A DNA stretch of 63,286 bases, filler included, from Hyphochytrium catenoides (GCA_900088475.1; 12 parts of 12 records of this genome joined end to end with filler, not necessarily neighbours in it), one strand, 5' to 3'; positions 41,136 to 63,100 are shown, counted from the whole stretch's first letter. Program-made: numbers and translations. The notes: generated from the letters alone by a model not told the origin.

Positions 41136-42226
41136 NNNNNNNNNNNNNNNNNNNNNNNNNNNNNNNNNNNNNNNNNNNNTTAATTAATTAANNNNNNNNN
41201 NNNNNNNNNNNNNNNNNNNNNNNNNNNNNNNNNNNAGCTTAGCTATCCCTTAGTGTTAGACAGCTGCCGGAGAGCCAGAGAGGGCATTCAGGATGAATCT
41301 CCAGTGTCAACTCTGCATAGCAAGGCCATTATGGGAATGTATCTGTTCCTGGGAAGCGCGTGGAAGCAGTTGATGCAGCTCTAACTCTTGATTACTAGCG
41401 GCGATCAGTAGGGCTGACGGCTGACGAGAGAGAGCTGAAGCGTACAGAAAGAGCGAGCAGCTTGAAGGACAGACTAACAAAGAGAGAGAGAGAGAGAGAG
41501 AGCACGCTGAATCGTCAGCAGATCTTTTTCCTCCATCAAAGATCTCGTGATCGTTTGTGGAGCTTTGTAAGGAGGACATCATCACTCTGTTTATTCAAGG
41601 AACCATCGATCTCCCTCGTAGATATATAGAGCTTGACCAGCGCCAAAAATCGAATCTAGGTCTAGGAAGAGCTCAATGGCGCTCCAAATGCTCCTACAGA
41701 ATCCTAAATAAATCAGTGGGTAATGTATGGAAGTTTAGGTAGATCAAAAAATGCATGGAGTGTTGTTTGGTCAGGATTGTTCTAGATTCCTCTGTCTAAA
41801 GCTGCCGTTATAAGCTCCCAATAAGTAGCCAACGGAATGTTTGACCTCCTCCTAAGATAAATTTTTAGAAAAGTAGAACAAGTCATCAAGGGTTCTACAG
41901 AGAGGAGCGAATCATTGCCTGTTTATCTGTAGGGCCATTTGGTCATCATGTCAAACAACTACCACTCTTTATGCTTCAAACACACATCGTCCGCATGGTA
42001 GTTCATAGGTACATTACCATGCCATCTCACTCATCGGAAGTATCTTCTCTCTCTGTGTCTGTGATTGTTCTAGAGTGTAGACGTTTATTACACTCTCATC
42101 ACACCACTCGCCATTCTTTCATAACCAGAATTATCCACTCTTTCTCTCTCTCTTTTTCACATCTGTCCACCCTCCTCTCTCTCTCTCTCTCTCTCCCTCT
42201 CTCTGTCTCTCTCTCCTTCTCTCACA

Positions 42227-42258
<32 letters not shown>

Positions 42259-42262
42259 ACAC

Positions 42263-42304
<42 letters not shown>

Positions 42305-42946
42305 GTCTCACTCTGTCTCTCTCTCTCTTTCTCCCTCTCTCTGTCTTTCTCTCTCTCTCTGTCTCTCTGTCTCTCTCTCGTACTCTTAACTCTGTTTACT
42401 CTCTCTTCCTATCTCCCTCCACTCTTCTCTCTCTCCCTCTTTCAAGCTCTCTCTCTCTTCTCCCCCATCTCTGTCTTCCTATGATTGCTCTTTCTTCTTC
42501 CTATGTCGCTTCTCTTCAGTTTTCCTGCAATGCGTCGTTTGTCTACGTGAAGAGAGAGAGAGAGAGCAGCTTGTGCCGCTTCTCTCTCCTGTGAGATATC
42601 TTCTGAGAAAGCAGAAGAGACAGACAAGAAGAGTTGGGAAGGAATCTAAGGAAATGGACGAGCAGGTCCTGGCAAACGAAAGGCCGACGAGTAAGAAGAA
42701 GGAAGAGCTCTCATGTGCTCCCCTTTCACCCTCTCTCTCTCTCTCCCTCCTCACTGACACTCGTCCCCTCCTTCATTTTCACTCTCTCCGCTCCCGTTGT
42801 GAGCTCTTTCTCCTCCTTTCACTTCGAAAGTTCCTACGGAGCTCTTAGCTACTCACCGGCCGGCCAGAGGAGAGCACGTCTTTCTCTCTGCTCTTTCTCT
42901 GTTTGTGCAGCCCTTTCTCTGTCTTTCTCTTGTCAGCAGTCAGAAG

Positions 42947-45296
42947 ATGAAGATCTTCCTCTTATCTTCTTTCTCCCTCTGCCTTATCTTCGCCTCAATC
43001 TGTGAAGGAGCATGGCAGGGCCCGCCGTCTTCTCCCTTCTTCGCTTATCTCAGCACGAAGACTCCTTACTGGCCGCAGCAGGATCCTGCAACTCTCACAC
43101 CTCCACCGCCCTCCTGCAAGCCCAAGCAGCTCAACTGGGTCATTAGACATGGAGCTCGGTGCGAGGCCGCCTTAGTCTCTTACTCTTCTTCCTTCTTCTA
43201 GACCCGATTGAGTTTCTCTTGCTTCATATTCTTCTATCTTCTTTCCTCCCTCGCTCGCGTTCTCCTCTCGAGTTCCTCTTCTTCTTTCTTCTAGACCCGA
43301 TTGAGTTTCTCTTGCTTCATATTCTTCTCTCTTCGTTCCTCCCTCGCCCGCGTTCTCCTCTCGAGTTCTCACACATCTACTGTTTCTCATACTTAGCGGC
43401 CCAGGCTCAGACGATGTGGAAGACCTTCAGAAATTTGTCCAGAAAGTAAAGAGTACGTCTTCCTCTCTCCCGTCCTGGCTAGTCAACTACAAAGTTCCCT
43501 TTGATCCGAAAGAGGACAAAGAGCTCTTTCCCTCTGGAATGAAGGAAATAGCAGGACTGGCAGAGAGACTGCGCTCCGTCTACGCCTCTCTCCTCTCCTC
43601 GCCATACAATCCGTCTGATGTAAGGATTAGACATACGGATGTACCGCGAACGGGCATGTCGGCTTCATCGTAAGAGCTTTCTCTCAATATCATCTTTGTC
43701 TCATCCTCTATGTTTAGTCTCCTTCACTGGCGGCGCATCTTCTTGCTTGACTGTGCCTCGTGTCCTCCACCCTGCTGGTTCTAGCCTCTATCTTAAGCTT
43801 CCTTCCCTCTATGAACCGGCGCGACTTACATTATGTTCTCTCAGCTTCTCGTATGCTCTATATCAAGGGACGGGAGTTCTTGGCTCCGATCGATTCCAAC
43901 CTGTCTTTTCACAAAGTATGCCAAAGAAGCAGGTACACATTCGATTGCTGCACCATCTTTCTCGTTCTTCTCTCTGTACGGGGACGATCAACTGGGAGAT
44001 CCACACACATGAGTTGGGAGACAACTGTCCAAAACGATAGCCCATCGCCTTGCTCTATAAGTTTTCCTAGTAAAGATACAGAGAAACAGCACGATAGCAG
44101 GAACACTGCCAGGAGAGACTGAGTGATGCTAAGTGATAGCAAGGCTCTAAAGCTAGCCCCCTGACTGGGCCCTTTCTAAGCTGCTCTCTCTCTCTCTCCA
44201 TATCTCTTTCTCAGGATGTTCTGCTACGGTTCTACGATAACTGCCCTCTGTACGAGTCCTCAGTGACTGAAAATGAGACGGCCTTGGCGGAGGTCTCGGC
44301 TTTTGCCAAAGGAGAGCTGATAGAGGCTCTACCTGGCAGACTGTCTCACTCGCTAGGGCTGAAGACAAATCTGACCGTCGAAGATCTCCAACTGGCTTAC
44401 ACAGCTTGCATGTAGGGATATTGCAATGCACTTTCTTCTTTCGCATTCTTCTACCGCTTACTTCCACGACTTTCGGCACCCTCGTCCTCTCTCCTTTTAG
44501 TTGCTACTGTTTTCCTGAAGGCGCTACCCGTCGCATTGTATGTCTGCTTATTTTAGCTCCAATCCCTTTGTGTTCCGACCTCTTCGTAGTTAGTCTCCCC
44601 TTCCTCTCCCCACAAAGCACATTCTTGCAGTCGCGGCTCTTTTTCTTATTTGGGAAGTCCTTGGGGCTTGATGTGCCAGCCAACCTGAAGCCATTCTCTC
44701 TCATCAACAGATACGAAGCCTCTCTCTATAACCAAACACAGTGGTGTGAGCTCCTAGGGGAGGAAACGCTGCAGGTGCTTGAGTACGCAGAGGACCTAGA
44801 AGAGTACTGGGAAGAAAGCTATGGCCATGATATCAACTTCCTGATGGCATCGCCTTTACTAAAGCACCTAATGGACAACATGGACGAGGCTTCAGGGAGG
44901 ACCAGTGAAGAGAAGAAAGGAGAAGAAGGAGGAAAAGTTGCCAGCTTTCTCTTTGCGCACTCGGAGACTGTTAGCCCGCTCGCTGCCCTTCTGAATCTAC
45001 CTTTTCGGGATCCGATGACGGCCAATCGCTCTCTGAAGGAAATAAACCAGAGGAACTTCAGAGCCGCAAAGGTTGCTCCCATGGGTGGCAACATAGGACT
45101 TGTACTTTATGAGTGTGACAAGATGAGCGCCAACGAAGAGAAGGGGGAACGATACAAGGTAAAGCTCCTACTGAACGAGAAGGAGTGGATAATCCCCGGT
45201 TGTTCGGAGCTCTACTGTGACTACGACCAGGCTAGGCAGGTATGGGCCAACCGCCTGGTGGGAGACTTCGACAAGCTCTGTGGCCGGAAGAAGTGA
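42947..45296 (+). CDS. MINPP1: Multiple inositol polyphosphate phosphatase / phytase-like histidine acid phosphatase (451 aa, 5 exons)
   Basis: Exons 42947-43158, 43397-43669, 43845-43932, 44215-44411, 44711-45296. Signal peptide, LSTKTPY, catalytic RHGARGP spanning intron 1, LLRFYDNC, LEYAEDLEEYW, FAHSET, and PMGGNIGLVLYEC. Confidence 0.93.
43183..43367 (+). repeat. 93-bp tandem duplication in MINPP1 intron 1
   Basis: CTAGACCCGATTGAGTTTCTCTTGCTTCATATTCTTCT... occurs at 43198 and 43291 with few mismatches. Confidence 0.92.
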
Positions 45297-46057: not shown

Positions 46058-46875
46058 TCGCCATAGTGCAGGACTGAGAAATAAGTAGTGCAGCAGACGA
46101 TCCTATCCTCCAGGAAGATGGCTAGACACTATCTGACACCGTCGCAGACTTAGATTGATGAGGGAATGAAGGAGACGCCGGCAACGGAGAGAGTATCAAA
46201 CCAAACATATAGGAAGCTAGAGGAAAAAAGAGACGACGAGGCTTAACAATGTGGGACGACGAGGCTCAACAAGCCAGCACAGGGACCTGAGCTTAGAAAG
46301 TGAAAGTAAAGGTGAGAGATGTCATGGGGTGGCCGGGCAGGGGAAGGGGAGCGAGAGAGAGAGAGAGGAGAGAGAGAGAGAATGAGAGAGAGAGGAGAAG
46401 GGGAAGAGAGAGGAAAGGGGAGAGAGGAAGGGGGAGAGAGAAGAGGGAGAGAGAGGAAGGGGGAGAGAGAGAGGAAAGGAGGGGGTGGGAGAGAGAGCGA
46501 GAGAGGGAGAGAGAGCGAGAGAGGGAGAGCGAGAGAGGAGCCGAGAGAGCGAGGAGAGCGACCGAGGGGAAGATTGAGCGACCCGAGAGAAGATAACGAG
46601 GAGGCCACGGGTGAGATCGAAGGCGATCATGGAGAAGCAGGAGTCAAAATCCTAGTACTCAGCCTGTCTCCGGCAATTTTACCAGAAGGCGCTTTGCCTA
46701 GCTAGACGACATGTTTAGAAATGAGGACAGGGAGAGAGACAAGAGAAAATGAGATGATGAAGCAACGAAGAGAGAGGGGCACGGTCGCCTAGTGCAGGAC
46801 AGAGAACGGCAGACGGAGCAGAAGATCTTACCTTCCAGGGAGATGGCTAAACCTTCGACACCGTCGCTGCCTTAG
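46058..46875 (+). repeat. Diverged direct repeat, two copies ~725 bp apart
   Basis: TAGTGCAGGAC.GAGAA...CCAGG.AGATGGCTA...GACACCGTCGC...CTTAG at ~46064-46153 and ~46790-46875. Confidence 0.75.
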
Positions 46876-47862: not shown

Positions 47863-50800
47863 CTACCGCATACGCCTAGAGGTACTAGGCGAAGACGCCT
47901 TGGCAACTTCGGTCACATCTGTCGCATTCTTCGACACCGCTACTGGAGTTGTTCCAGCTTCAGTTGGGAGAGGGGAAGCAGAGGTGTGAGCCACGCCTGT
48001 CGTAGGGACGGTCGTAGTCGTTGCAGACGTAGGAGCCAATGAAGGAGCCTCAGTCATTGGGAGTTCGGTTAGAGGGACATCTGGAGAGGCTTCCATTGTG
48101 CTGTTCTCTCCCATGTTGCTCAGCGCTGACCTCGCATCGTCGTCAACGTCTGCATCCTCCACAATGAAGTTCTCCGAGCGCGGTCTGACCTTGTTAGCAA
48201 GCGCATTCAGGAGGTTGCCTAGCCCAAACGGCAGTTTGATCTGTGTGTTTTGGAGAAGAGAGAGGATGACACCAAAGAGGTTGGGCAGGAGAGCATCTGG
48301 GAGAGAGTTGAGACACCTGTTGAGCCACTCAAAGTGTACACCATCGCGAACAGTGTCAAACTCTACGACGAACTTCCCTTTGTGCCAGATAAGATCGTTG
48401 ATGATGCCAAAGATGTTAAGAATGCCCTTGGAGAGACGCAGCTGAGCCTTGATCTTTGTCACGCCACCGTTGTTTCCGTTGGTGAGCTTCGTGTCACGGA
48501 TCATCACCTTTCCAAGCTCTCTGTCTTTGATCTTTAGGAAGCCCAAGACATCACCAACATTGATACCCAGAGCTCCAGGATTGTTAAATTGCACGTCCAG
48601 ATCAATGCCAAAGCCCTCCTTGAAGCTGATAGACGGCTTTACATGGAGAGGAGACCAGAGAATGAGCTCTGGGGCTTCAATAAGTCCGCGAGAGAAGAGC
48701 GTGAACGTCTGCTCAGGAGTAGCCTTTCTAGGGTCAGCTACAGTGTGGATTTTAGCGTATCCTAGAGACATCTCCTGCGCGAAATCCTCCCACTTTAGCA
48801 ACCTTGGAGCAGCCACCTGAAGTCCATCGATGATGGTCGGAGAGCCTTCAAACCGTGTGATAAGCACCAGGCGGAACTTAGGTGGGCCTCCAGGACCAAT
48901 CTTCAAGTCGGAGATGTATGCATCCACGATTGCACCGTTCTTGTAGACCACAGCGCCCGTGACAGAAGGAATGTTAACCTCCATGACCTGCAGCTTCTTA
49001 GGGAAAGGCGCAAGGGTTATCATGGCATCCATGCCTTCAGCAGTAATGTCACAGGCGATGTCTCCCAGTTCGACGGGGCGGTTTTTGTCCACAAACTTCC
49101 ACACAGCGTCTAGAGCATCATGCAGAGGAGCAGAGACCGCGACCTCTTCAAAGGTGTCCACTTGCGCAGCCTCAGTCCCAAAGTGGAGCTTTGTCAAAGT
49201 CATCGTCAGGTCAAAGTGGTTACCTGGAGGATAGTGGAAGACAACATCTCCTAGAGCCACTGCCATCCTGCTAGCCATCTCCATAGCCAGATCATTGCTC
49301 TCAAACCCGATCACGATGTCCACTGTGACTACACCGTCCTTGAAAGTAAAGCCCTTGGCCACAAATTGAGCAAACGGAGCGGCGTTGAGCAACATGGCCC
49401 CAGAAGCAAAAGGCACAAAGATGCTGAAGTTATTCAGGTCAATGCCCAGGATCTTTGCATCAACAGAGACAGAGAAGTGTCCATTGTCAGGCATTCCAAT
49501 CTTTGCCTTGCTGATATCCACATCATACTTGGAGGGCACCGTGCCATCAATGGCTCCAATGAGCTCCTTGTAAAGATCAGAGACGAACTTGCGGATGTCC
49601 GTGGCGATAGTATTCACGCTGATGGCAATGTCTGCAAGCTCCATGAGATCCACAAAGTCATCCGAAGAAAAACCAAATTGGGCGCCAGCGGCTCCAACCG
49701 TGGCCGTCACATTGCCACTACCCGCGATCTGCACTACCAGTTCCTTGCACGCGCTCTTGGCCTCAGGGGAGGATACAAAGGAGACCTTAGATTTGACAGC
49801 CAAATCCAACTGCTTCTGCGCAGACGGCTCAATGACCAGCCCGCCGTCCAACTTCGCATTGGCAATCTTTGCACCACTGACCGTCACCCCACTGTTGATG
49901 AAAGGCATAGAGACGTGAATGGAAGGGGCGAAGTCCTTGACAGAGATGGAACCATCCACCTTTATCTCTGGACTGGTGGAGGCATCCAGACCACCGTTGT
50001 TGATCGTGATCTTCTTCATCAGCTTGTCCACGGAGTCGAAGTCTTCAAGGTTGATACCAAGCCCTAAGAGAATCTGGTCTACAAGCTTTTTGTTGAGCAC
50101 AGAGGCCGATGGGATGCTGATCTTGGCCTGGCTGAAGGCCTTAATGAAGTCACTGTCGCTGTAACCAAACACCACGCCATTGACAGTAAATCGTTCCTTT
50201 GTGTTGCCCAGACCTTCCTTTAACACTTCCTTGAGCAGCTTTGCCACCATCTGCTTGGCTTCCAAGGAGGACTTACCAAAAACAAGCTCAGAGGCCACTG
50301 CCAACCCGTTCTTTCCAGGCACCAACTGCAGCTTTCCAAAGCGCGCATCCAGCATATGGATGAGTTCAATGCCGAGGTTCATAGACGAAAAGCCCACATC
50401 AAGAGTGACAGGGAAGGGAAGGGAGACTTGTGCATCCACGCCCAGCCTCACCGTCTGCTGTGGCGCTGCCCCAACATCAACCTTGCTCATACCGAACTCG
50501 AACTTCTTCAGGAGAGCAGCAATGTCCAGAGGCTTAGAGCCGTCACCGAGGATGGGCTTGAGCCTGTTGAGATGCAGAGAGAAGTACACGCCCTCCAGAG
50601 CACGAATATAGTCGTCCGCGCTAACTCCAATCCTGGCTCCGCCAAGCTTAAGGACCGAGGTGAACTCACTATTCTCAAAGAATTGCTGGGTGATGACACC
50701 AATCTTGCCTGCTAGGCTATCGCTGTCCATGACCTGTGTCCTTATTCCTAGGTCCAGAGTGGTGTTCCCGCTGGTCACTTTAACCCCTGAAATGTGGTTG

Positions 50801-53800
50801 TTCATAGCTGGGACATCGTCTAGCTTCAGTCCAGCGCTCAGATAAGGCAGGTCCGCTTCAAGGTTGAAGCCAAAGCGCAGCCCCAGGCCAACGGAGGAGT
50901 CAATGACAGCAGCAGGGGCCATAGCAACTGAAGCCTTCTTGACGGTGACGCCAGCACTGCTTCCCAGAGAGATCTCTCCACCGTTCTGCAGGTGGTCTAG
51001 CAAGTCCTCCTTCGCCAGCTTGTCCAGCACCTCGTCAACGAGCTTGCTTGTGAAGTTAGCAATAGGCTGGGCTATCTTGTCCAGATCAACTCCCAAATAG
51101 ACATTCTTGAGGCATTTGATGTGATCCTGCTGGCTGTATCCTACGCCTGCACCTCCCACCATCAGCTTACCAGGGAAAGCGCCGGCCTCTGCATAGCTGT
51201 CGAAGGTAAACTTCAATTTGTCGGCCAATACAGGCTCGTCCCATACTTTCATATTCACACCAAGGCTTAGAGAGCTCTTTCCCTTGCCTTGCAGCGCCAT
51301 ACCAGAGATCTCCTGAGTCGTGGCCATTACATCGTCGAGCTTGGCTCCAGCCGTGAGATAAGGAACAGATGCAAAGACGTTGAGAGGGAAGCGAAGGTCC
51401 ACATCAGCCTTGGCTAGCACCACGGCACCAGACTTCAGATTCATTGCGATCTTCTTCACTGCGACGCCGAAGTTCTTCCCGATGGAGATCACCTCCTTGC
51501 CCGCCAGCAAATCGTCCATGAACGAAGCGTCCCCGACCTTCTTCATCACGTCATCCACGACCTTTCTGATCTTCTTAGCAAAAGGCTGAAGAACTCTGTC
51601 CATGTCAATGCCTAGCTGGATCTGCTCAAGTGCACGAATCCTGTCGTCCTTAGAGACACCCATAGAGAGGCCAGCAGCATTGATCCTAGCACCAAAGACA
51701 TCATGAGCAAGATAGTTGTCGAAGACAGCCTGAAGCTTCCGACCCAGGACGTCGTTGTCGTTAACGTTTGCCTGAGCCTCCACCACCATTGAGTTGTTTC
51801 CCTTGCCGCCAATCTTCAACCCACTGATGTCATTCAGAGCAGCTAGAACGTCGTCGATGGCCAGTCCAGCACCCATGTAAGGAATATCCGCAGCGATGTT
51901 CCAGGGCATGACCAAGGTGGTGTCTAGCGCTGCACCCACAGCAGAGGCTGGCAAGAAAGAGACAGAAGCGTTATTCAGCGCCACACCCACGTCCTTGGTG
52001 ATCTGGATCACCTCCCCATTCTCTAGTTGCTCTAGTAAGTCATCAGAGGTGAGCTTGGTGATGATATCATCCACCAGCTTACGCGTGAGGTTGGCGATCG
52101 GCTGCGCTACTCTGTCCAGATCCACACCCAGGTAGACATTCTTGAGGCATTTGATGTGGTCTTCTTGGCTGTAGCCCACGCCCATACCTCCCAGCACCAG
52201 CTTGCTAGGGAACACGTTGGTCTGCATGTAGGAGTCAAAGACAGTCTTCAGCTTCGCTCCTAGAATAGGCTCGTCTGCTACTTTCACCAGCACGCCAAGG
52301 TTGAGAGAGCTCTTCCCCTTGCCCTGCAGCGCTATACCAGAGATGTCATTGAAAGCAGCAGGCACTTCATCCACCTTCACGCCAGCGGTCAGATATGGAA
52401 CAGTGGTAAAGACGTTAAGAGGGAAGCGAAGAGCGACGTCTGCACCTACGTCTACCACGGCGCCAGGCTTCATTCCTACTCGTACAGATGGCACAGCTAC
52501 GCCAAAGCTCTCGCCAATCGTAATGACCTCTTTGCCGGCAAGCAGGTCATCTATGAACGCAGCGTCTGAGACCTTCTTCATCATGTCATCCACCACCTTT
52601 CTGATCTTCTTAGCAAAAGGCTGAGCAATCTTGTCCATGTCAATGCCGACCGTGACTTTCTCCAGAGCGTGGATCCTGTCCTCCTTGGAGACACCCATGG
52701 AAAGACCAGCAGCAAAAATCTTAGCGCCAAAGACATCCTTAGCAAGATAGTTGTCAAAGACAGTCTGGAGCTTCTTGGCGAGCACTTCATTGTCCTGAAC
52801 ATTTACTAGAGCCTCCAGCGCCAGAGAGTTGTTGCCCTTGCCACCAATTTTCAACCCGTTGATGTCATTCTGGGCAGCTAGAACGTCATCTACGGCGAGA
52901 CCAGCGCCCATATATGGCACATCTAGGGCAATGTTCCAAGGCATAATCAGAGTAGAGTCCAGACCTGCGCCTACAACCGAGGCTGGGAGGAAAGACAAAG
53001 TCGCTTTGTTCAATGAGACGCCTACATCTTCAGTAATCTTGATCATCTCTCCGTTCTCCAGCTGAGTGAGGAAGTCATCAGAGGTCAGCTTATTTAGCGT
53101 CTTATCCACGAAATCTTCTCCCCAGTCGGCCACAGGCTGGGCAATGCTGTTCAGGTTAAGAGGGACAAAGACCTGCGAGAAAGCATTGACAGTGTCCTCA
53201 GCGCTAGAACCAAAGACCACACCGCCTGCAATGAGAGTCCCTGGGAACACGTCCTGCGTCTTATAGCTCTCGAACACATGTCCGAGCTTCTCCTGGAGGG
53301 CGGGAGTATCCTCCACCTTCACGTTGGCGTCCATGTTGACAACCTTTGTGTCGTCGTACTTTAGCCCATTAATGGACATGACAGCAGCAGTTAGTTGGTC
53401 CAGGCCCACGGCGCTCTGTACGTAGCCAAAGTCAGCAGTCAGAGGGAGAGAAATACCAGTGAGAGCAGAGATATCCACTCCAGCCTCTGCCTTTACACCG
53501 ATGTTGGCACCAGACTTGACCGCCACAGCCGCCGAAGAAAGGGAAAGGCCAGTACTGTTACCCTTAAGGATACCCTGCTCAATCTCTACCACCTTGCCAG
53601 TGAAGTCTATAGGCTTGCCAGTAGGCAGAAGGATCTTGTCTGGGTTGATGGCAAGCTCCATCTTTCTAAAGGCCCGGATGTAATCATCACTGCTGTACCC
53701 GGCCTTCAGACCAGAGATAAGAATAGAGCTGCCTAGAGGAGCGCCAGCAAAGAACTTCTCAGCCAGCTTGCCAATGATGACTGGGGTCCGGTCGTCATTC

Positions 53801-56800
53801 TGGAACTGCATTGCCAAGTTGAGCTTCAGGTCATTCTTTTCGCCTGATGGCTTGATAGACAGGCCTTGAGCCAGCTCGGTAGAGACAAACGGCACCTCAG
53901 ACACGCCAACATCTGCTGCTGCGTAGCCCATGGAAACCGCTAGAGAGAAAGGATTGACGAGAGAAGCTTCAGTGCTTACACCCAGCCGCTTGCCAGGCTG
54001 TGTAGCGACATTGAGATAGCCAACCTCCACCCCAAACTTCTTCTGCAGGTCATCAAGAGAGGCAGGTAGTCCTAAGGTCTTCAGCGCGTAGTCAACGACC
54101 GGGCCGACAACATCGTTAATGCGCAGAGAGGGAGAGATGAGGCTAAATGACTTGATAGAATCCTCAGGACTGACGCCAAAAATCATGCCTTGTACACCAG
54201 CCATTCCAGGGAAGTTGCCGGTGGCCGTGTATCCGCGAGTAATGGCGCCAAGCTTATCGGCCAAAGCGTCAGTGTCCTGCACAGCTACGTCTGCCTTAAT
54301 GGCAGCTGTCTGCTCCTCAGAGACCTTCATACCGGGAAGAGAGACATGGAAGCCATCAATGTCGTCTACAGTCATCTTCGCACCGGCATAGCCGATATCC
54401 AGGATGGCCTTGAAGCCTAGGTTGACTGAGGCTTGTGCGCTAGCATTAACAACGCTTCCGGGCTTGAAGCCCACTGCCGCACCCTTGAGAGAGACAAGGC
54501 CACTCTTGTCGCCATCGATCTACAAGGGGCAAAACGAAGATGAGAGAGGTAAGTCCTATTGCTGGGAAGGGTGAGGAACGTGAGAAAGAATAGAAAGAGA
54601 GCAAAAGGGCAAACTTCATCATGTCCCCTACCTGCTGCTTGACGATCTTCACTACCTCTTGAGAGAGATCGATAGGCTCCCTACCCGCCGCGATAACAGA
54701 GTCCATATTCACGTCCACCTTCACCTTGGATAGTGCTCTAATGGTATCCGATGAAGAGGCTCCTAGTCCGAGGTTGTACACGCCCATAGAGGAAGAGAGA
54801 GGACCCCCGGTAAGAAAGTTGTTGAAGAGAACAGCCACTGCCTTTGGTGTCGCTTCTGTCTCTATGAACTGCAGCCCCATCCCAAGCTTCATCATGTTTG
54901 TCTGAGTACTGGGAGAGATCTCAAGGCCAGGAAGCTGGAAGCCTACGAAAGGTGCACCGCTAATAGAGATATCAGAGGCCACATAGCCGATCTTCACACT
55001 GAGCTTCATCTTGTTCAGCATTCCGACGCTGGCACCAACATCCATTGCCTTGTTGGGCTTGGTGGAGGCTGAGACCTCGTACAATGTGAAGTTTGTCTCT
55101 TTCTGGATGGCATCCAGAGTGGTGGGCAGCTTTATAGGCAGGAAGGTCTTAGCTTGCTCAATGATAGACGTTGTGTCAAACTTCTCCAGCTGGATTGTGG
55201 CGTCAACCTTAGAAAGAAGGTCGTTTGTCTCTGTGGCAGACGTACCAAAGAATATCCTTGCAGCTCCCACAGCACCAGTCACGCTTCCATCAATAAACTG
55301 CGATACCAGGCTAGCAACAATGTCAGGGAGCTTCTCAGACTCTTGGTTGAACGCCATAGAAAGAGAAGGTGCCATCTGCCCGCTCTCTCTCTTCAAGTCC
55401 AGGCCTTCCATCTTCATTCCCATCAGCAGGGTCTTCTCAACCTTGACGTCGGTGGCAAAGTAAGGGATAGCAGCAGAGATAGCTAGTGGGCTCTTATAGC
55501 TGAAGTCCAGTGCAGCAGCCATAGACGCAGAAGGTAGGGTCTCCATAGAGACAGAATTAATTGCCGGGACCTGGAAGTTCTTGAGAGTATCCTTATTAGG
55601 GAGAATCTTGGAAAGGTTGATCGGGCTTTCTTTCTTCTCGGCTGCCTCCGTAACCTGCTTCACCATCTCGTTGGTGATAACGACCTTCACCTTGGAGAAC
55701 TGATCAATAGTAGCAGGGTCCTCTTCCGCAGCTCCCTTGGGCACCAGCTTCAATCCCGTGACTGACAACTCTGGAGTCAGATCCTTGCCATTGAGGACTT
55801 CATCAACAATCACGGCAACCTTTTCAGCCATCCCATCAGCACCGGTAGCTAGCTCCATGTGTGCACCAATAGAGAGAGGGGCCTTGCCCAGAGAGAGGCT
55901 GATAGGCTCAAGGGAGACACCAGTAAGCTGCTTGCCGTCTACATTGACCTTGGTCAGCACGGATCCAACGTTAGCTGTCACGTTCAGTGGGTTATTGACG
56001 GTAGAATCGACTGCAGCATCAAGCTTGGTCGCGCTCTTGAGTTGGACTCCAGCGCCGTCAACAACCACCATATCGGGCTTCATAGCGTTCTTCACCATCT
56101 TCTTAGCGATGTCCTTCATCTTGTCGGTGCTCAGCATGACTTGGACTTTGCTGAAGGTAATGAAGCTGTCCTCCTGGGACTGCCCAAACTTGATGCCGCT
56201 GACTCCTAGATGTGCGGCGGGGCTGTCCTCCTTCAGCAGAGCATCCACCAGCTGCTGAGCTACTTTAGGGATATCCTCATTCTTAGGGATGACGGCCTCT
56301 ACAGCTAGGTCGTTGCTTGGCTTGGAGGCATCATAGAGCATTCCCTTAGGGAATGCCACGCCCATAAGGTTGACAGGTTTGTCTTTGTCTCCTGCAAGGG
56401 CATCCATTCCCAGATAGCCAAAGTTCGCGGTGACCTTAGGGAAGTCCTGGACAGTGAGGCCGATTGAGCCTGCTGCTTCAAAGCCTGAAACCTTGGTCAT
56501 CTGCGTGACTGCCATCTGGTTGATGATAACTGGCACGGCTGTGTAGTTATCTGTCATGTTCCCTAAGATTCCTTCAATGTCAAAGCCAGGCAGCTGGAGC
56601 TGCAAGGTGGTGTCCTGGAAGAGATTCTTGCTCCATTGGAATTGGTGGTTAGTGCTTGGGTCAGTGATAGAGATGCCACCAATGCCCGCGGCTGACTCTT
56701 GGTTGGCCAAAATAGGGTTAGCAATCTGCGCCATAGCCTCCGCAGCTTCAAGCGTGTTCACCGGAATGATCACAATGTCTGCTTTGAAATGCAGTCCCGT

Positions 56801-58357
56801 AGGCTCGTCATAATGAAGAGAAATATTCCCTATTCTGATCGCCAAGACATCATCTCCTTTCTTTATGCCGGACACGGTGATATCGGCCTGATAGTTGAAC
56901 TGCAAATCGGGAAGAGGAAGCTTCAAGGGAAGAACAAGATTGACAGAGGTGCGGATCTCCTTGCTTGTGGCCTCAGCAGTGAAGTTCACTTTTCCCAGAA
57001 GAGACTTGATACCCTCAGGGGTAGTCAGATCGGCAACATCCTTCACCAGAGGGCTCTTGAGAATTTCATCCACGGGAAGAACAAGCTCCAGAGGGTCAGT
57101 GATTCTCTCAACGAACTCTGTGCCAGGGATAGTGAACGGCCCAACCAAACTGACTCGCAGAGAGGTTAGACCTTCGCCTAAGAACTTGCTGATAGTATCA
57201 CCAATCGCTTTAGAGGCAGCATTATAGTCAAGACCCGTCGCCGTAGCATCGTACTCAAGTGTCAGAGCCAGCTCATTCATGTCTTGAACCAGTGTGAACT
57301 CTGAGACAATGAACCTGCCCATAAAGGCATCTTCCAGCTTCAGACCAAGCGACATACCCTTCAGCTGCATCTGCAGAACCAGAGGGTTTTGTACTAGCGT
57401 TGTCGTCTTGATGGTCATTCCCTTGTCTGTCACATCCATCTCTAGCGTCTTGACCGCAAGAGAGAGAGGAAGAGATGAGAGAGGGCTAAACAGCTGGTAA
57501 GACTGGATGCCGTACTGCTTCAGAGCCACCGCCTGCTTCAAGTCCGTCAGTGAGCTCTTCAGCATAAACTTGGGAATACTCTGCACAAAGTTGCCCACAT
57601 TATTGGTCACATCCCCCACAGGCACCGTCCTAGTGACTGGCAGCTTCTTGTACCAGGTAATACCGAAGACGGTGATGTGCAGAGGGGCCCAGACGTAGAC
57701 ATTAAGGTCCTTGATTCCCTCCGTGGAGCTCAACTGCTTCACAACGTTGACTACTGCTGGGTAGTCCTGGGGAGGAATGCTGATTGCGCCTCCAGTCCTA
57801 AGAAGAAGAGGCTTTCCAAGGTTGGTCGTCACTTCTGGAAGGCCAAGTACAGCCAGTCTCTCGTCTGTTCCTTTTAGACGCAGTTCCGCGTCCATGGATC
57901 CCAGTGTCACTGAGATAGAGAAAGGAAGGAACTTCTGGTTCACTCCTGTCTCTGTGGCGAAGGAAAGAGAGTTCGCCGAAAAGTCAGAGAGGTTCAGATA
58001 TGCCATAGAGATCTGGCTAAGATCTGCCCCTTCGACCTGTGACTGGATGATGGCTGGAATGGCCCAGAAGTACATAATCGGCGTGGTGATGGCGAAGAGG
58101 ATAAAGTTGACAGCCAGAACGTGAAGCGTGATCCACTGCCATCTCTTCAACCGCCCGTTGAAGTACCGCGCCGTCCCCTTTCTCTCTTTCTCTGTCAATT
58201 CAGGGTTATCGTCGTACTGAGGGCGGTACCACGCTCGCACTCGCCCCATGATACCGCGAGGAGTCTCTTCTTCGCCTCTCTCTCCGCCTCGCGGCTCTTT
58301 GAAGGTGTCTTCGGACACTCGGATGATGCTCTCATTGGAGAACCTTTGCGCCACCAT
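47863..58357 (-). CDS. Giant single-pass membrane protein with tandem LEA_2/DUF3712/Tag1-like modules (~3,460 aa, 2 exons: 58357-54632, 54519-47863)
   Basis: The 1303-aa and 2203-aa ORFs are joined by phase-0 intron 54631-54520 (CAG|GTAGGG...TTGTAG|ATC). One hydrophobic helix at ~aa 73-103, then repeated modules ending in G.S..D.I.A(F/L)S.V.V, then an S/T/P-rich tail. Family assignment is from motif recognition only. Confidence 0.9.
51020..53100 (-). repeat. Intragenic tandem duplication, period 1,035 bp (345 aa, two modules)
   Basis: Matching anchors: GTCATCAGAGGT at 52039/53074, CTGATCTTCTTAGCAAAAGGCTGA at 51566/52601, CTTGAGGCATTTGATGTG at 51106/52141. Confidence 0.95.
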
Positions 58358-59285: not shown

Positions 59286-59331
<46 letters not shown>

Positions 59332-60150: not shown

Positions 60151-63100
60151 CTTCATACCGACTCTTTCCCCGTCTCTCTCTCTCCCTCTTATTCTGCGCC
60201 TTTTCTTTCCATCTGCATGACTAGGCATCTGTCTATCTTCCTCCTCTTCTTCTACACATTTCTGAATGATCTCTTCTTTCTCTTTCTCTCTTCTTTTCAT
60301 CATTCTTCCGTCGTCCTTTCATCAATTTGTCGTTGTCTCTCTCTTCTTTGTCTCTTCCCGTTCTCCCCCTCTTGCCCTTGAGCTTTGACCTCCACTGTCG
60401 TGCAAATAAGCTGCAAATCTTTCTGTGGCGTCGGTCGGACACACGCAGCGGCGGCATTGCAGAAACAGAGAAAGAGACAGAGACAGAGAGAGAGGCTCAC
60501 ACTTGACGAGAGAGAGAGAACTCACACTCAACAAGAGAGGAGAGAGAGAACTGGCGATTAGGAGGAGGAGAGAGAGTTCTATCTCTTTGGACAACTCTTG
60601 ACATGTCAAAGTGATGATGAAGATGATCAGTGATGATGGCTCCTCCATTCCTTACTTTTCCTATCAGTCACGTCCTATGCTTCGCGAGTCATGAACCCGC
60701 TCGATCAGTCTCTCGTTCCCTCTCTCTCTCTCTCTCTCTCTCTTTCCTGCCGATCGTGAGGGTTCTGAACTGGATAGTATCATTTGGCTCTCTCTTCTCT
60801 CTCCCTCTTTGTTCGGCGTCTTCTGCGCTCTCAATTCATAGAAAAAGTAAAAAATAAATAAGAACCTCATCAGCCCTGCTTGTCTCTCTTTCTCTCTGTC
60901 CTTTTCTTCCTCTCTCTCCTACTCTCTTTCTCTCTCTCTTGTCAGTGTCTTCCATCACGGGCCTGTGGAGGGCTACAAGTACTCTTTTTATAAAGTCTTT
61001 GACTGGGCGAGGCAAAGAAGGGCGGACAACAAACATATCGGCCAAAGCAAGAAGTGATAGGCACGTCATACATTTAGCTCCTTTAGGATCTACCTCTTCT
61101 TCCTTCATCTCTTTCTCTCTCGTCTCTCTCTCTCATCTCTCTCTCTCTCTCTCTTTTACTTGTTCCATCGCTCTGCTCTACAACTGTGTCAGGTCTGAGA
61201 CCGAGAAGCTGCTAGTAGCCAAATTTGACTGCAAGGACGAAGACTGGACGGACAACAGAAGTTTGGGACGGGTTCTTCATTGTCACTCTCTATCTCCTGC
61301 TTCTCTCTCTCTCTCTCTCTCTATCTCCTGCTTCTCTCTCTCTCTCTCTCTNNNNNNNNNNNNNNNNNNNNNNNNNNNNNNNNNNNNNNNNNNNNTTAAT
61401 TAATTAANNNNNNNNNNNNNNNNNNNNNNNNNNNNNNNNNNNNNNNNNNNNCAACTGCAGCAAGGCTTGTCAAGGTTGGACAACATCGTGGAGGAGGGCT
61501 GTGAGAAGAGACCAAGATTCTCACGTTTGATGATAGGTGACAGCCGGAGCAGCAAGGAGGACAGTGAGTAACGAAGCGATAGAGAGAGCAAGGTGGTAAG
61601 AGACAGAGAGAGAGAAGAGACGGCAGTGCGAGTCACCCCCACCTGGGGGTCGGGAGAGGGGGGGCTCTGTGATGAAGGGAGGAGTAATATATAGGATCTC
61701 AGGTAGTTTAAGGGGGTTCTGGGGGGGGCCAGGAGGTTTGTGATCCCTAAGGTGGAGAGGGTTGGGGGAGGCGACAAGAAATGCCTTGGTGACGAGAAGT
61801 GGTGATGAGATAGACATCACCTACATCCTCCTACTACTGTAACCAACGTGCTGTCTGTCATAGAGGCTGGCTGAGAATGGATTCAATCATGGCAAGGTGG
61901 CCATCATTAGCAACAGAAGCGCGCTAGAAACCACCACCAGAGATTAGTAGGACCCTTTGCCCCATCAATAATCTTCCTCTTATCCTGTTGGAGCCTCAAT
62001 AACAAGCATGCTCGCTGATGACAGCAGAAGGAGGAGAGGGACTGCTGTTCCTCAAGGGATTTTAGTTCTTCCAATTGCTGTTTATCCTGCCGCCGCGGCC
62101 AGCAGTCGCAAGGAGTTTGACGGGTCTGGTGTCGCCCGTCTGCTGCCTGATAAGTGGTTAGTGACGACCTCTCGGCTCCGTTGTAAGTTGTTTGGCATCC
62201 AGACGGGGAGCACTGCTGGTTTGACCGACCTCACGGTGGATGGTACTTTGAGTGCGGGTCGGTTAGGTGGGCGGCCTCTCTGATCCAAAAAGTGCTACTA
62301 GCAACAAACACGACACCTTCCTAACCTATCGTCAAAGAATAACAGCAGCTGCTGTTATGCAGGATTGGAAGCATGGGAGTCCCAATGTCTTGCTAACTGC
62401 TGCAGTGAAAGAAGCGTCTAGTGTCAGATCACAGAACCAATTCACCAGGAGGAAGGAGTCATCATCGTCTCTTCTCTGCTCTTCAGAGCTTGTGATGAAC
62501 TTGTCTAAGTAACTAAAGCTTCTTCTTGATGATGAAAAGTGATATGCGGTTCCCAGGTGGTTATGTGATGAATGGCTTTGCGTTACCGAAGCCCTCCTTG
62601 TGGTTGGACGTCCTACAGAGAAGAAGAAGTGCTGGAGAAAAGAACTCTATAAGTGAGAAGCAAGTTAGCAGAAGAGGAGGGGTGATGTAGGTAGGATGTG
62701 GCGTAAGTAGGACTTCCTTTATCCAACAGTCATTGGCAAGTCGCATCGATTGCTTATAATATTACTAGGAGGTTGGTGCTACGTTTAGCTAGAACTAGCT
62801 GCACTCGTCATTTTCTGTTCGCATTAGACTTAGTGGTTCTTCTGCGGCCCGCATAATGCTTCATAAACTCTTTGTATTGGTGGTAGATGGGGATACATAC
62901 AGCTGCTATAATATGATGAAAGAAGGTCAAGGATACCAGTGGACCTTCACCGCCTTCCTACTACGTCAAGCGCTCTGTTCAGACACTAATAGGAGTCTAA
63001 TTGCTGCTGTCTGCCCTCTTTCTCTGTACTTTGCTAGCTACCCTGTTAGCCAATTAGTCAGAGCAGCTTTTTTTGGGCGGTTACTAGTCCCAGTGTTCGT

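What the first reader, a model, noticed from the sequence alone, without database searches (positions are those of the whole stretch)
47863..58357. Giant ~3,460-aa membrane-anchored chain of ~20 LEA_2/Tag1-like modules: candidate extended lipid-handling or surface filament
Seen: two long ORFs are one gene with a single 112-nt intron. It has a short charged N-terminus, one TM helix, then about 3,200 aa of tandem ~165-175-aa modules (alternating hydrophobic beta-strands, NP(L/F)-type turns, a helix, and a G.S..D.I.AFS.V motif), and an S/T-rich tail with no GPI-like end. Known: yeast Tag1 and Vac7 and human TMEM106B are type II membrane proteins with lumenal LEA_2-family domains that have been predicted to carry lipid; DUF3712 proteins of fungi repeat such modules. 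Inference: this is a highly amplified member whose modules could stack into a long lumenal or extracellular conduit or rod. The module count is an estimate by eye.
Basis: partly seen in the sequence, partly recalled or inferred. Interest (0 to 1): 0.8.

Follow-up and report, generated by a model that had tools for sequence, protein, structure and literature searches.

The report
Giant membrane-anchored chain of LEA-2 modules
This is one fungal gene for a 3,460-residue membrane-anchored protein made of about 20 tandem LEA-2-type beta-sandwich modules that are predicted to pack into a stiff rod; it belongs to an unstudied family of early-diverging fungi, and its proposed lipid-handling role could not be tested.

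Summary
Two minus-strand ORFs join through a 112-nt GT..AG intron (54631-54520) into one 3,460-aa protein. It has a 74-aa cytosolic head, one TM segment (residues 75-104) and about 3,350 extracytoplasmic residues.

A self-built HMM finds 15 significant tandem modules of 152-173 aa. Profile comparison adds three diverged modules at the N-terminus and one or two at the C-terminus, giving 19-20.

A single module models at pLDDT 91 as seven strands with a helix between strands 5 and 6, which is the LEA-2 topology. [quoted passage not shown] LEA14, TMEM106A/B/C, NHL proteins and yeast Tag1 dominate the AlphaFold DB hits.

A three-module model (pLDDT 93, pTM 0.87) matches Tag1/DUF3712 clusters best (TM 0.52).

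The window protein hits no Pfam model, but three relatives pass the LEA_2 threshold.

The family is small (355 representatives) and found in Chytridiomycota, Blastocladiomycota and Mortierellomycota. All members are unnamed.

Giant fungal LEA-2 concatemers were already noted by Levine (2021), so this is a new member of a known kind.

Lipid binding, a conduit function, localisation and splicing at RNA level remain untested.

The parts
54632..58357 (-). Exon 1, codons 1-1242, starting at the ATG at 58357
   Evidence: tblastn with orthologue N-termini finds no upstream exon.
54520..54631 (-). Intron, 112 nt, GT..AG. It shifts the reading frame by one base.
   Evidence: Supported by module continuity and orthologue collinearity. 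There is no RNA evidence.
47863..54519 (-). Exon 2, codons 1243-3460 plus the stop codon
   Evidence: In a 94%-identical contig of run X4, all 11 listed differences fall on codon position 3 of this frame.
58136..58357 (-). Cytosolic N-terminus (residues 1-74), carrying the conserved juxtamembrane motif W-Y-x-P-x-Y-D ... R-Y-x-x-G-[RK]-x-K-R-W-Q
   Evidence: The motif is shared with orthologues such as WYKPVYDYKTPGLS..RYCGGRLKRWQF.
58046..58135 (-). Single transmembrane signal-anchor (residues 75-104), predicted N-in (type II)
   Evidence: This is the only stretch where 19-residue windows have mean Kyte-Doolittle hydropathy above 1.6. There are five basic residues (K/R) in the 15 residues before it and two acidic residues (net -2) in the 15 after it.
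56621..58045 (-). Conserved N-terminal lumenal region (residues 105-579) holding three diverged LEA-2-like modules
   Evidence: hhalign against the module profile gives residues about 113-210 (87%), 299-406 (96%) and 465-569 (90%). The region is collinear with more than 30 orthologues.
49117..56620 (-). Fifteen clear tandem modules (residues 580-3043, each 152-173 aa); the stretch is interrupted by the intron
   Evidence: Single-module model at pLDDT 91. Three-module model at pLDDT 92.9 and pTM 0.87.
51076..53145 (-). Duplicated two-module super-repeat (residues 1701-2045 and 2046-2390)
   Evidence: The two copies align without gaps at 70% amino-acid identity. Codon-position identities are 0.77, 0.86 and 0.54, which indicates purifying selection since the duplication.
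48226..49116 (-). Conserved C-terminal cap (residues 3044-3340) with one or two diverged modules and a terminal conserved helix (W-L..L...P...L.P..I...L)
   Evidence: No Pfam match in the window protein or in nine orthologues.
47866..48225 (-). S/T/P-rich tail (residues 3341-3460) ending in RRMR; not GPI-like
   Evidence: The tail is present in only some orthologues (Spizellomyces, Thoreauomyces, Gaertneriomyces, Geranomyces, Phlyctochytrium).

Best explanation
This is one gene encoding a type II membrane protein. A short cytosolic head with a conserved juxtamembrane motif and a single signal-anchor hold a chain of 19-20 LEA-2-superfamily beta-sandwich modules on the extracytoplasmic side. Each module has seven strands, one helix between strands 5 and 6, and two amphipathic linker helices.

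The chain is a greatly lengthened version of the Tag1/DUF3712 architecture. Neighbouring modules are predicted to pack in a fixed geometry, so the ectodomain should be a stiff rod tens of nanometres long rather than a floppy string (inferred).

The mechanism I consider most likely is also inferred. Like the characterised membrane-anchored LEA-2 proteins Tag1, Vac7 and TMEM106B, the protein would sit in an endolysosomal or vacuolar membrane (or, less likely, the plasma membrane). It would project the rod into the lumen. The modules would act as a scaffold or sensor that binds lumenal hydrophobic ligands or partners. The state would be passed to the cytosol through the anchor and the conserved cytosolic motif.

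The number below is for the whole statement. Taken separately, I put the gene structure and LEA-2/Tag1-like identity at about 0.9, and the localisation and ligand-sensing mechanism at about 0.3.
For: Gene structure.

Topology.

Module count.

Fold: seven strands plus a helix between strands 5 and 6, matching the LEA-2 description in Levine 2021. 3BUT is the top PDB hit by Foldseek (E 4.4e-4). It is also top in the Foldseek-independent VIA search of 48,161 chains (Z 6.8, 114 of 125 residues aligned, 1.7 Z above the next hit).

Other structure libraries: AFDB Swiss-Prot hits are LEA14s, TMEM106A/B/C, NHL proteins and YLR173W, which is Tag1. AFDB clusters are mostly LEA-2/WHy proteins. The first ESM Atlas row is a LEA_2 cluster.

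Multi-module shape: the best Atlas matches carry Tag1_C, LEA-2_1, DUF3712 and Tag1_N/M/C, at TM 0.52 over 375-381 residues.

Rigidity: pTM 0.87 for three modules, and the linker helices have a hydrophobic stripe.

Sequence link: relatives P0025, P0169 and P0176 pass the Pfam LEA_2 gathering score, and P0001 reaches E 3e-4.

Family conservation: 355 representatives with up to 26 modules; conserved N- and C-terminal caps; purifying selection.

Precedent for localisation: Tag1 and Vac7 are AP-3 cargoes of the vacuole (PMC8859911).
Against: The window protein matches no Pfam family at E below 1. The two DUF3712 matches among 54 modules, at E about 0.04, are at chance level.

Structural scores for a single module are middling (TM 0.37-0.47, Z 6.8), in a range where unrelated Ig-like sandwiches also appear.

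There is no transcript evidence for the splice.

Localisation, ligand binding and signalling are inferred by analogy only.

The S/T/P-rich tail and the variable module number fit a cell-surface protein at least as well.

No acidic di-leucine or conserved YxxPhi sorting signal was recognised by eye in the cytosolic head (no formal motif scan was run).
Confidence: 0.55

Rival explanations
1. It is a cell-surface filament. The protein reaches the plasma membrane, and the LEA-2 rod spans the cell coat or wall as a spacer, adhesin or wall-integrity sensor, with the O-glycosylated S/T/P tail at its distal tip embedded in the wall.
For: It has a type II extracytoplasmic topology. The distal tail is 44% S/T/P in the window and in several Spizellomycetales orthologues. 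Module number varies from about 10 to 26 among relatives. A two-module unit has been duplicated here, as is usual in surface repeat proteins. The closest multi-domain PDB matches are biofilm and surface proteins and integrin legs, although TM is only 0.1-0.16. Plant NDR1/NHL proteins appear among the fold hits; that they are LEA-2 proteins of the plasma membrane is from my own knowledge.
Against: The tail is missing from many orthologues, so it is not a core feature. There is no GPI signal, no recognisable wall-binding domain and only 5 Cys in 3,460 aa. N-glycosylation sequons occur at roughly the frequency expected by chance (21 observed in all, about 19 expected from composition). Tag1, Vac7 and TMEM106B are endolysosomal.
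Confidence: 0.3
2. It is a bridge-like lipid conduit. The hydrophobic grooves of successive LEA-2 modules line up into one continuous track that moves lipids from the anchoring membrane to a distant membrane or particle.
For: The best structural match, 3BUT, has a 27-angstrom hydrophobic groove with an unmodelled lipid-like ligand (Levine 2021). The next-best matches are the lipid-binding sandwiches UNC119 and PDE6D, at Z about 5. Inter-module packing is rigid. The protein is anchored at one end and has a conserved hydrophobic or amphipathic helix at the other.
Against: No groove or cavity could be examined. The strands show plain one-face hydrophobic alternation, as in closed sandwiches. Two searches of the PDB with the three-module model returned only generic multi-Ig-like chains or the single-domain 3BUT match. 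Module number is not conserved, which is unlike rulers of fixed length. No second membrane is evident on the extracytoplasmic side.
Confidence: 0.1
3. It is not one functional gene. Either these are two separate genes or a pseudogene split by a frameshift, or the repeats were mis-assembled.
For: No RNA run covering the junction was listed.
Against: There are canonical GT..AG ends exactly where the frame has to shift. The module across the junction is intact, and orthologues are collinear across it. Both exons are open for 3.7 and 6.7 kb. A single DNA contig covers 53719-56500. The repeats are only 54-86% identical at the DNA level, which is too diverged to collapse in assembly. Differences to a relative fall on third codon positions.
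Confidence: 0.03

Closest known systems
Saccharomyces cerevisiae Tag1 (YLR173W; Pfam Tag1_N, Tag1_M, Tag1_C)
   Same: Both have a type II topology with a short cytosolic N-terminus, one TM segment and tandem lumenal LEA-2-like domains. YLR173W is among the single-module fold hits. Tag1 clusters are the best shape matches for three modules, at TM 0.52 and 0.46 over 375 residues.
   Different: Tag1 has 3 domains against 19-20 here. The window protein hits no Tag1_N/M/C or DUF3712 Pfam model. This family has its own conserved N- and C-terminal caps, a cytosolic motif and, in some members, an S/T/P tail. The known function of Tag1 (terminating autophagy, AP-3 cargo) is untested here.
Giant fungal DUF3712 proteins, for example Ustilago maydis UM15053 with 15 gapless LEA-2 domains (Levine 2021, bioRxiv 10.1101/2021.03.12.435176)
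   Same: Both are fungal proteins built of many LEA-2 domains repeated without gaps, reaching thousands of residues.
   Different: The window protein, its modules and the relatives I scanned gave no significant DUF3712 match, and none is on record for the 76 relatives listed by the two protein searches. The sequence link is to PF03168 LEA_2 instead. The family was found in Chytridiomycota, Blastocladiomycota and Mortierellomycota, not in Dikarya.
Archaeal LEA-2 protein Af_0446 (PDB 3BUT)
   Same: It is the best solved-structure match for a module in two independent searches, covering 114 of 125 residues. It has the same order of seven strands and one helix.
   Different: Sequence identity is about 10% and Z is only 6.8. 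The archaeal protein has two domains. The fungal module adds two linker helices of about 30 residues in total. The 3BUT groove could not be checked in the model.
TMEM106B and Vac7 (endolysosomal type II proteins with a single LEA-2 domain)
   Same: They share the topology and the lumenal LEA-2 fold. 8B7D and TMEM106A/B/C appear among the hits.
   Different: They have one domain rather than twenty. The scores are lower than for 3BUT (Z 3.9).
Repeating beta-groove bridge-like lipid transfer proteins (VPS13, ATG2, BLTP1)
   Different: No structural match appeared in either PDB search. The units here are discrete sandwiches separated by helices, and they are predicted to lie on the lumenal rather than the cytosolic side.

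Membership tests
LEA_2 superfamily (PF03168 / WHy; prototypes 3BUT, 1XO8) | Beta-sandwich of seven strands with a single alpha-helix between strands 5 and 6 | tested here: met
   DSSP on the models gives five strands, then helix 120-136, then two strands. The pattern repeats three times in the three-module model. The definition is taken from Levine 2021.
LEA_2 superfamily (PF03168 / WHy; prototypes 3BUT, 1XO8) | The nearest solved or predicted structures are LEA-2 domains | tested here: met
   3BUT ranks first by Foldseek, by VIA on the Foldseek list and by the VIA wide search (Z 6.8). LEA14, WHy and NHL proteins and TMEM106 dominate, and the first row is a LEA_2 cluster. The absolute scores are middling.
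LEA_2 superfamily (PF03168 / WHy; prototypes 3BUT, 1XO8) | The window protein itself matches the PF03168 HMM at the gathering score | tested here: not met
   No Pfam family at E below 1 for either exon or for single modules.
LEA_2 superfamily (PF03168 / WHy; prototypes 3BUT, 1XO8) | Clear homologues of the window protein match PF03168 at the gathering score (transitive sequence link) | tested here: met
   P0025 scores 29.5 bits, P0169 29.6 bits and P0176 27.9 bits against a cut-off of 25.4. P0025 matches the module profile (E 6e-230). P0169 and P0176 are close relatives of P0007, which matches the window's exon 2 (E 6e-33).
LEA_2 superfamily (PF03168 / WHy; prototypes 3BUT, 1XO8) | [quoted passage not shown] | not testable with these tools
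   Model coordinates are not returned, so no cavity analysis was possible. Only a one-face hydrophobic alternation in the strands was seen.
Tag1 / DUF3712 family | Type II membrane protein: short cytosolic N-terminus, one TM segment, tandem lumenal LEA-2 domains | tested here: met
   One hydrophobic segment at residues 75-104, with a positive-inside charge bias. The modules follow directly after it. This is a prediction only.
Tag1 / DUF3712 family | Matches to Pfam DUF3712 (PF12505) or Tag1_N/M/C | tested here: not met
   Searches gave none. In one search, two of 54 modules matched at E about 0.04, which is chance level. No DUF3712 match is on record for the 76 relatives listed by the protein searches.
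Tag1 / DUF3712 family | The arrangement of consecutive domains resembles Tag1 | tested here: inconclusive
   The best Atlas shape matches are Tag1/DUF3712 clusters, but TM is only 0.52 (0.34-0.46 when normalised by the hit) at rmsd about 6 angstroms.
Tag1 / DUF3712 family | Vacuolar localisation through AP-3 and a role in autophagy termination | not testable with these tools
   This is known for yeast Tag1 (PMC8859911). It needs experiments in a zoosporic fungus.
Bridge-like lipid transfer proteins (RBG superfamily) | A continuous repeating beta-groove forming one long hydrophobic channel | tested here: not met
   The secondary structure shows discrete seven-strand sandwiches separated by helices of about 30 residues. 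Neither PDB search with the three-module model returned a multi-domain match beyond generic Ig-like chains.

The most novel reading that the evidence does not exclude
The grooves of about 20 rigidly stacked LEA-2 modules join into a continuous hydrophobic track. That would make this family a previously unrecognised class of extracytoplasmic (lumenal or periplasm-like) bridge-like lipid transporter, built from a fold unrelated to the repeating beta-groove proteins. It would be anchored by its N-terminal TM segment and would contact a second membrane or particle through the conserved C-terminal cap helix.
Probability: 0.1. Interest if true: 0.85.

Novelty: new member of a known kind. Interest (0 to 1): 0.42.

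Why it matters
Membrane-anchored LEA-2 proteins (TMEM106B, Vac7, Tag1) matter in lysosome and vacuole biology, but their molecular activity is unknown.

This family shows the same building block amplified about twenty-fold into a predicted rigid rod. It is conserved with its own end-caps across three early-diverging fungal phyla and is missed by the current Pfam Tag1 and DUF3712 models.

The family offers a natural multi-copy substrate for asking whether LEA-2 domains bind lipids and whether they can act in series. One orthologue is in Spizellomyces punctatus, a chytrid that can be transformed (my own knowledge).

For genome annotation, the result turns a set of 'hypothetical proteins' of 2,000-4,800 aa into a recognisable class.

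Tried and rejected
- Pfam on both exons, on 54 single modules and on the C-terminal cap of the window protein and nine orthologues gave nothing significant for the window protein.
- A sequence-profile search of the PDB with the module alignment gave only chance hits, E 0.3 or worse.
- The ESM Atlas search by language-model features gave a best score of 0.85 to unnamed clusters, below the tool's reliability line.
- A search of the 5.8-billion-protein set with the three-module alignment gave no hit among 8,000 prefiltered candidates. I read this as a failure of the word prefilter, not as absence, because the exhaustive HMM search found 355 proteins.
- RNA evidence: none was listed. Laying reads gave only DNA contigs plus one 236-nt contig from a relative.
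- The search for an upstream exon using orthologue N-termini found nothing.
- PDB searches with the three-module model for a known rod or conduit architecture gave no meaningful multi-domain match.
- I considered and rejected two separate genes or a pseudogene; mis-assembly of the repeats (they are too diverged); a cleavable signal peptide (the hydrophobic segment starts at residue 75); and a GPI anchor (the C-terminus is basic and not hydrophobic).
- A desiccation-protectant role like plant LEA14 cannot be excluded, but nothing here speaks for it.
Full report
**Observation**

The piece 41236-61351 holds two long minus-strand ORFs, 58357..54446 (1,303 aa) and 54474..47863 (2,203 aa). Between them lies a 112-nt stretch that begins with GT at 54631 and ends with AG at 54520. 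Because 112 is 3 x 37 + 1, removing it brings the two frames together. Joining 58357..54632 to 54519..47863 gives 3,460 codons and a stop, with no internal stop.

Without splicing, exon 1 reads into 61 unrelated residues and stops. The downstream ORF would have to begin in the middle of a repeat module. The module that crosses the junction (residues 1221-1378) is complete and scores like its neighbours (146.8 bits, HMM positions 5-162). BLAST alignments to orthologues cross the junction in single HSPs, for example residues 2-3119 against P0010.

No RNA run was listed, so 'one gene' rests on sequence logic and homology, not on transcripts. A DNA run that may be the source of the assembly confirms the genomic sequence, with one contig covering 53719-56500. 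A 2025 run holds a 236-nt contig from a close relative, and all 11 listed differences fall on codon position 3 of this frame.

**Anatomy**

There is a single hydrophobic segment, residues 75-104. Five basic residues lie in the 15 positions before it, and the sequence after it is acidic. This predicts an N-in, type II orientation.

The 74-residue head carries a juxtamembrane motif, W-Y-x-P-x-Y-D ... R-Y-x-x-G-[RK]-x-K-R-W-Q, that is conserved in orthologues. The longer N-termini of those orthologues are otherwise unconserved and of low complexity. tblastn found no upstream exon.

Self-BLAST of 180-aa windows gives offsets of 147-176 aa and their multiples from residue about 640 to 2930. A regular expression for the G.S..D.I..[FL]S.V motif hits 12 times at spacings of 154-173 aa. 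An HMM built from the modules and iterated once finds 15 tandem modules between residues 580 and 3043, with E-values from 1e-33 to 1e-59.

Both flanking regions are conserved as such in more than 20 relatives each. In profile-profile comparison against the module profile:
- The N-terminal region contains three module-like domains, at probabilities of 87%, 96% and 90%.
- The C-terminal region contains one at 90% and a possible second at 47%.

Residues 1701-2045 and 2046-2390 are a duplicated two-module unit. They align without gaps at 70% amino-acid identity, with codon-position identities of 0.77, 0.86 and 0.54, which indicates selection on the protein since the duplication.

The last 120 residues are rich in S, T and P and end in RRMR, with no hydrophobic terminus. 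The protein has 5 Cys, a net charge of -74 and 21 N-x-S/T sequons, which is about the number expected from its composition.

**Relatives**

A word-indexed search with exon 2 found seven proteins: six from chytrids and one from Mortierella. An exhaustive HMM search of 1.84 billion cluster representatives with a 54-module alignment found 355 proteins at E up to 1e-3. They carry up to 26 matched stretches, in a protein of 4,767 aa.

Named members come from:
- Chytridiomycota: Spizellomyces, Geranomyces, Gaertneriomyces, Thoreauomyces, Phlyctochytrium, Irineochytrium, Blyttiomyces, Dinochytrium, Globomyces, Boothiomyces, Entophlyctis and Quaeritorhiza.
- Blastocladiomycota: Blastocladiella, Sorochytrium and Catenaria.
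- Mortierellomycota: many genera.

All are annotated as hypothetical proteins. Several genomes have two paralogues, and in Mortierellaceae the locus tags are consecutive.

The window protein is only 22-30% identical to any of them. In a quick tree of the N-terminal region, for which no support values were examined, it falls next to the blastoclad sequences. Its own sequence was not in the collections searched.

**Fold**

The window protein hits no Pfam model, and the module profile hits no PDB sequence.

With the 54-module alignment, AlphaFold2 models module 1701-1872 at pLDDT 91. The model has two linker helices, five strands, a 17-residue helix, and then two more strands with the conserved G-x-S-x-x-D turn between them. 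[quoted passage not shown]

The structure searches agree on LEA-2:
[quoted passage not shown] The plant LEA14 structures 1XO8 and 1YYC and the TMEM106B lumenal domain 8B7D are in the top 20.
- VIA-align gives 3BUT a Z of 6.8 over 114 of 125 residues, ahead of the lipid-binding sandwiches UNC119 and PDE6D at Z about 5.
- The Foldseek-independent search of 48,161 chains returns the same order.
- AFDB Swiss-Prot returns MJ1138, five LEA14-type proteins, TMEM106A/B/C, NDR1/HIN1-like proteins and YLR173W, which is Tag1.
- AFDB clusters return a family member at TM 0.67 and then mostly LEA-2/WHy proteins.
- The first ESM Atlas row is a LEA_2 cluster.

The absolute scores are middling, so the argument rests on three things together: the consistency of the hits, the matching topology, and a sequence bridge. 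Relatives P0025, P0169 and P0176 pass the Pfam LEA_2 gathering score (29.5, 29.6 and 27.9 bits against 25.4), and P0001 reaches E 3e-4.

**Multi-module geometry**

Residues 1701-2217 (three modules), modelled with 73 in-register triples, give pLDDT 92.9 and pTM 0.87. A pTM this high for 517 residues implies a confident relative placement of the modules. The linker helices have an i, i+4 hydrophobic stripe, consistent with packing against the sandwiches.

The nearest shapes in the ESM Atlas are clusters carrying Tag1_C, LEA-2_1 and DUF3712, or Tag1_N/M/C (TM 0.52 over 375-381 residues). The PDB has no multi-domain counterpart. Foldseek returns generic chains of Ig-like domains at TM 0.1-0.16, and the wide VIA search returns only the single-domain 3BUT match.

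**Interpretation**

What is shown:
- one gene by sequence logic;
- a type II anchor by prediction;
- about 20 LEA-2-superfamily modules;
- a Tag1-like architecture amplified six- to seven-fold;
- a rigid predicted packing;
- a conserved family with its own end-caps in three early-diverging fungal phyla.

What is inferred:
- The ectodomain is a rod tens of nanometres long.
- It lies in the lumen of an endolysosomal or vacuolar compartment, by analogy with Tag1, Vac7 and TMEM106B, or at the cell surface.
- It binds hydrophobic ligands.

The surface reading gains weight from two things: the S/T/P tail, which is present in only part of the family, and the evolutionary variability of module number.

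**Novelty**

Levine (bioRxiv 10.1101/2021.03.12.435176; published in Proteins 2022 according to the reference list seen) already reported three relevant points:
- fungal DUF3712 proteins reach more than 4,000 aa;
- a Ustilago protein has 15 gapless LEA-2 domains;
- Tag1 is a three-domain concatemer.

That preprint is the only paper in the library that mentions DUF3712.

This protein is therefore a new, highly diverged member of a known kind. What is new is limited to three points: the recognition of this particular zoosporic-fungus and Mortierella family, its conserved caps and cytosolic motif, and the confident rigid-rod prediction.

Noticed in passing
window 43100-45296 (+): An upstream neighbour looks like a multi-exon histidine acid phosphatase gene. 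ORF 44406-45296 matches Pfam His_Phos_2 (E 2.4e-12, profile positions 205-354), and an RHGAR motif (RHGxR, the start of the RHGxRxP signature; the final Pro is not present) lies in ORF 42905-43201.
   Followed up: partly
window 42138-42462, 46349-46558, 59286-59326, 61286-61351: The intergenic DNA on both sides of the gene holds very long CT/GA dinucleotide microsatellites (up to about 163 copies). They produce strong GC and AT skew and spurious 'SLSLSL' or 'RERERE' ORFs.
   Followed up: partly
window 43183-43368: A 93-bp unit is repeated twice in tandem at 95% identity, inside or next to the phosphatase gene.
   Followed up: no
window 52924-53056: The DNA run X1 gives two alternative 133-nt contigs of about half depth each, differing at four positions (52954, 52984, 52999, 53026). 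This is probably allelic variation inside module 8.
   Followed up: no
window 53949-54180: Run X4 (2025, kind unknown) holds a 236-nt contig about 94% identical to the window. All 11 listed differences are at third codon positions, which points to a closely related organism with the same gene under purifying selection.
   Followed up: partly
window 58136-58250 (-); orthologues P0001-P0036: The cytosolic juxtamembrane motif W-Y-x-P-x-Y-D-[YF]-x-x-x-x-L-[ST] ... R-Y-x-x-G-[RK]-x-K-R-W-Q is conserved across the family, although the rest of the cytosolic head is not. It may be a sorting or partner-binding site.
   Followed up: partly
relatives (Linnemannia, Mortierella and others): In Mortierellaceae the family is present as two paralogues of about 2,040 and 2,380 aa with consecutive locus tags (for example KI688_012058/012059 and EC991_003747/003748), which suggests a tandem gene pair. 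Many carry a precomputed hit to PF26150, a model that my Pfam scan did not reproduce and whose name I could not determine.
   Followed up: no
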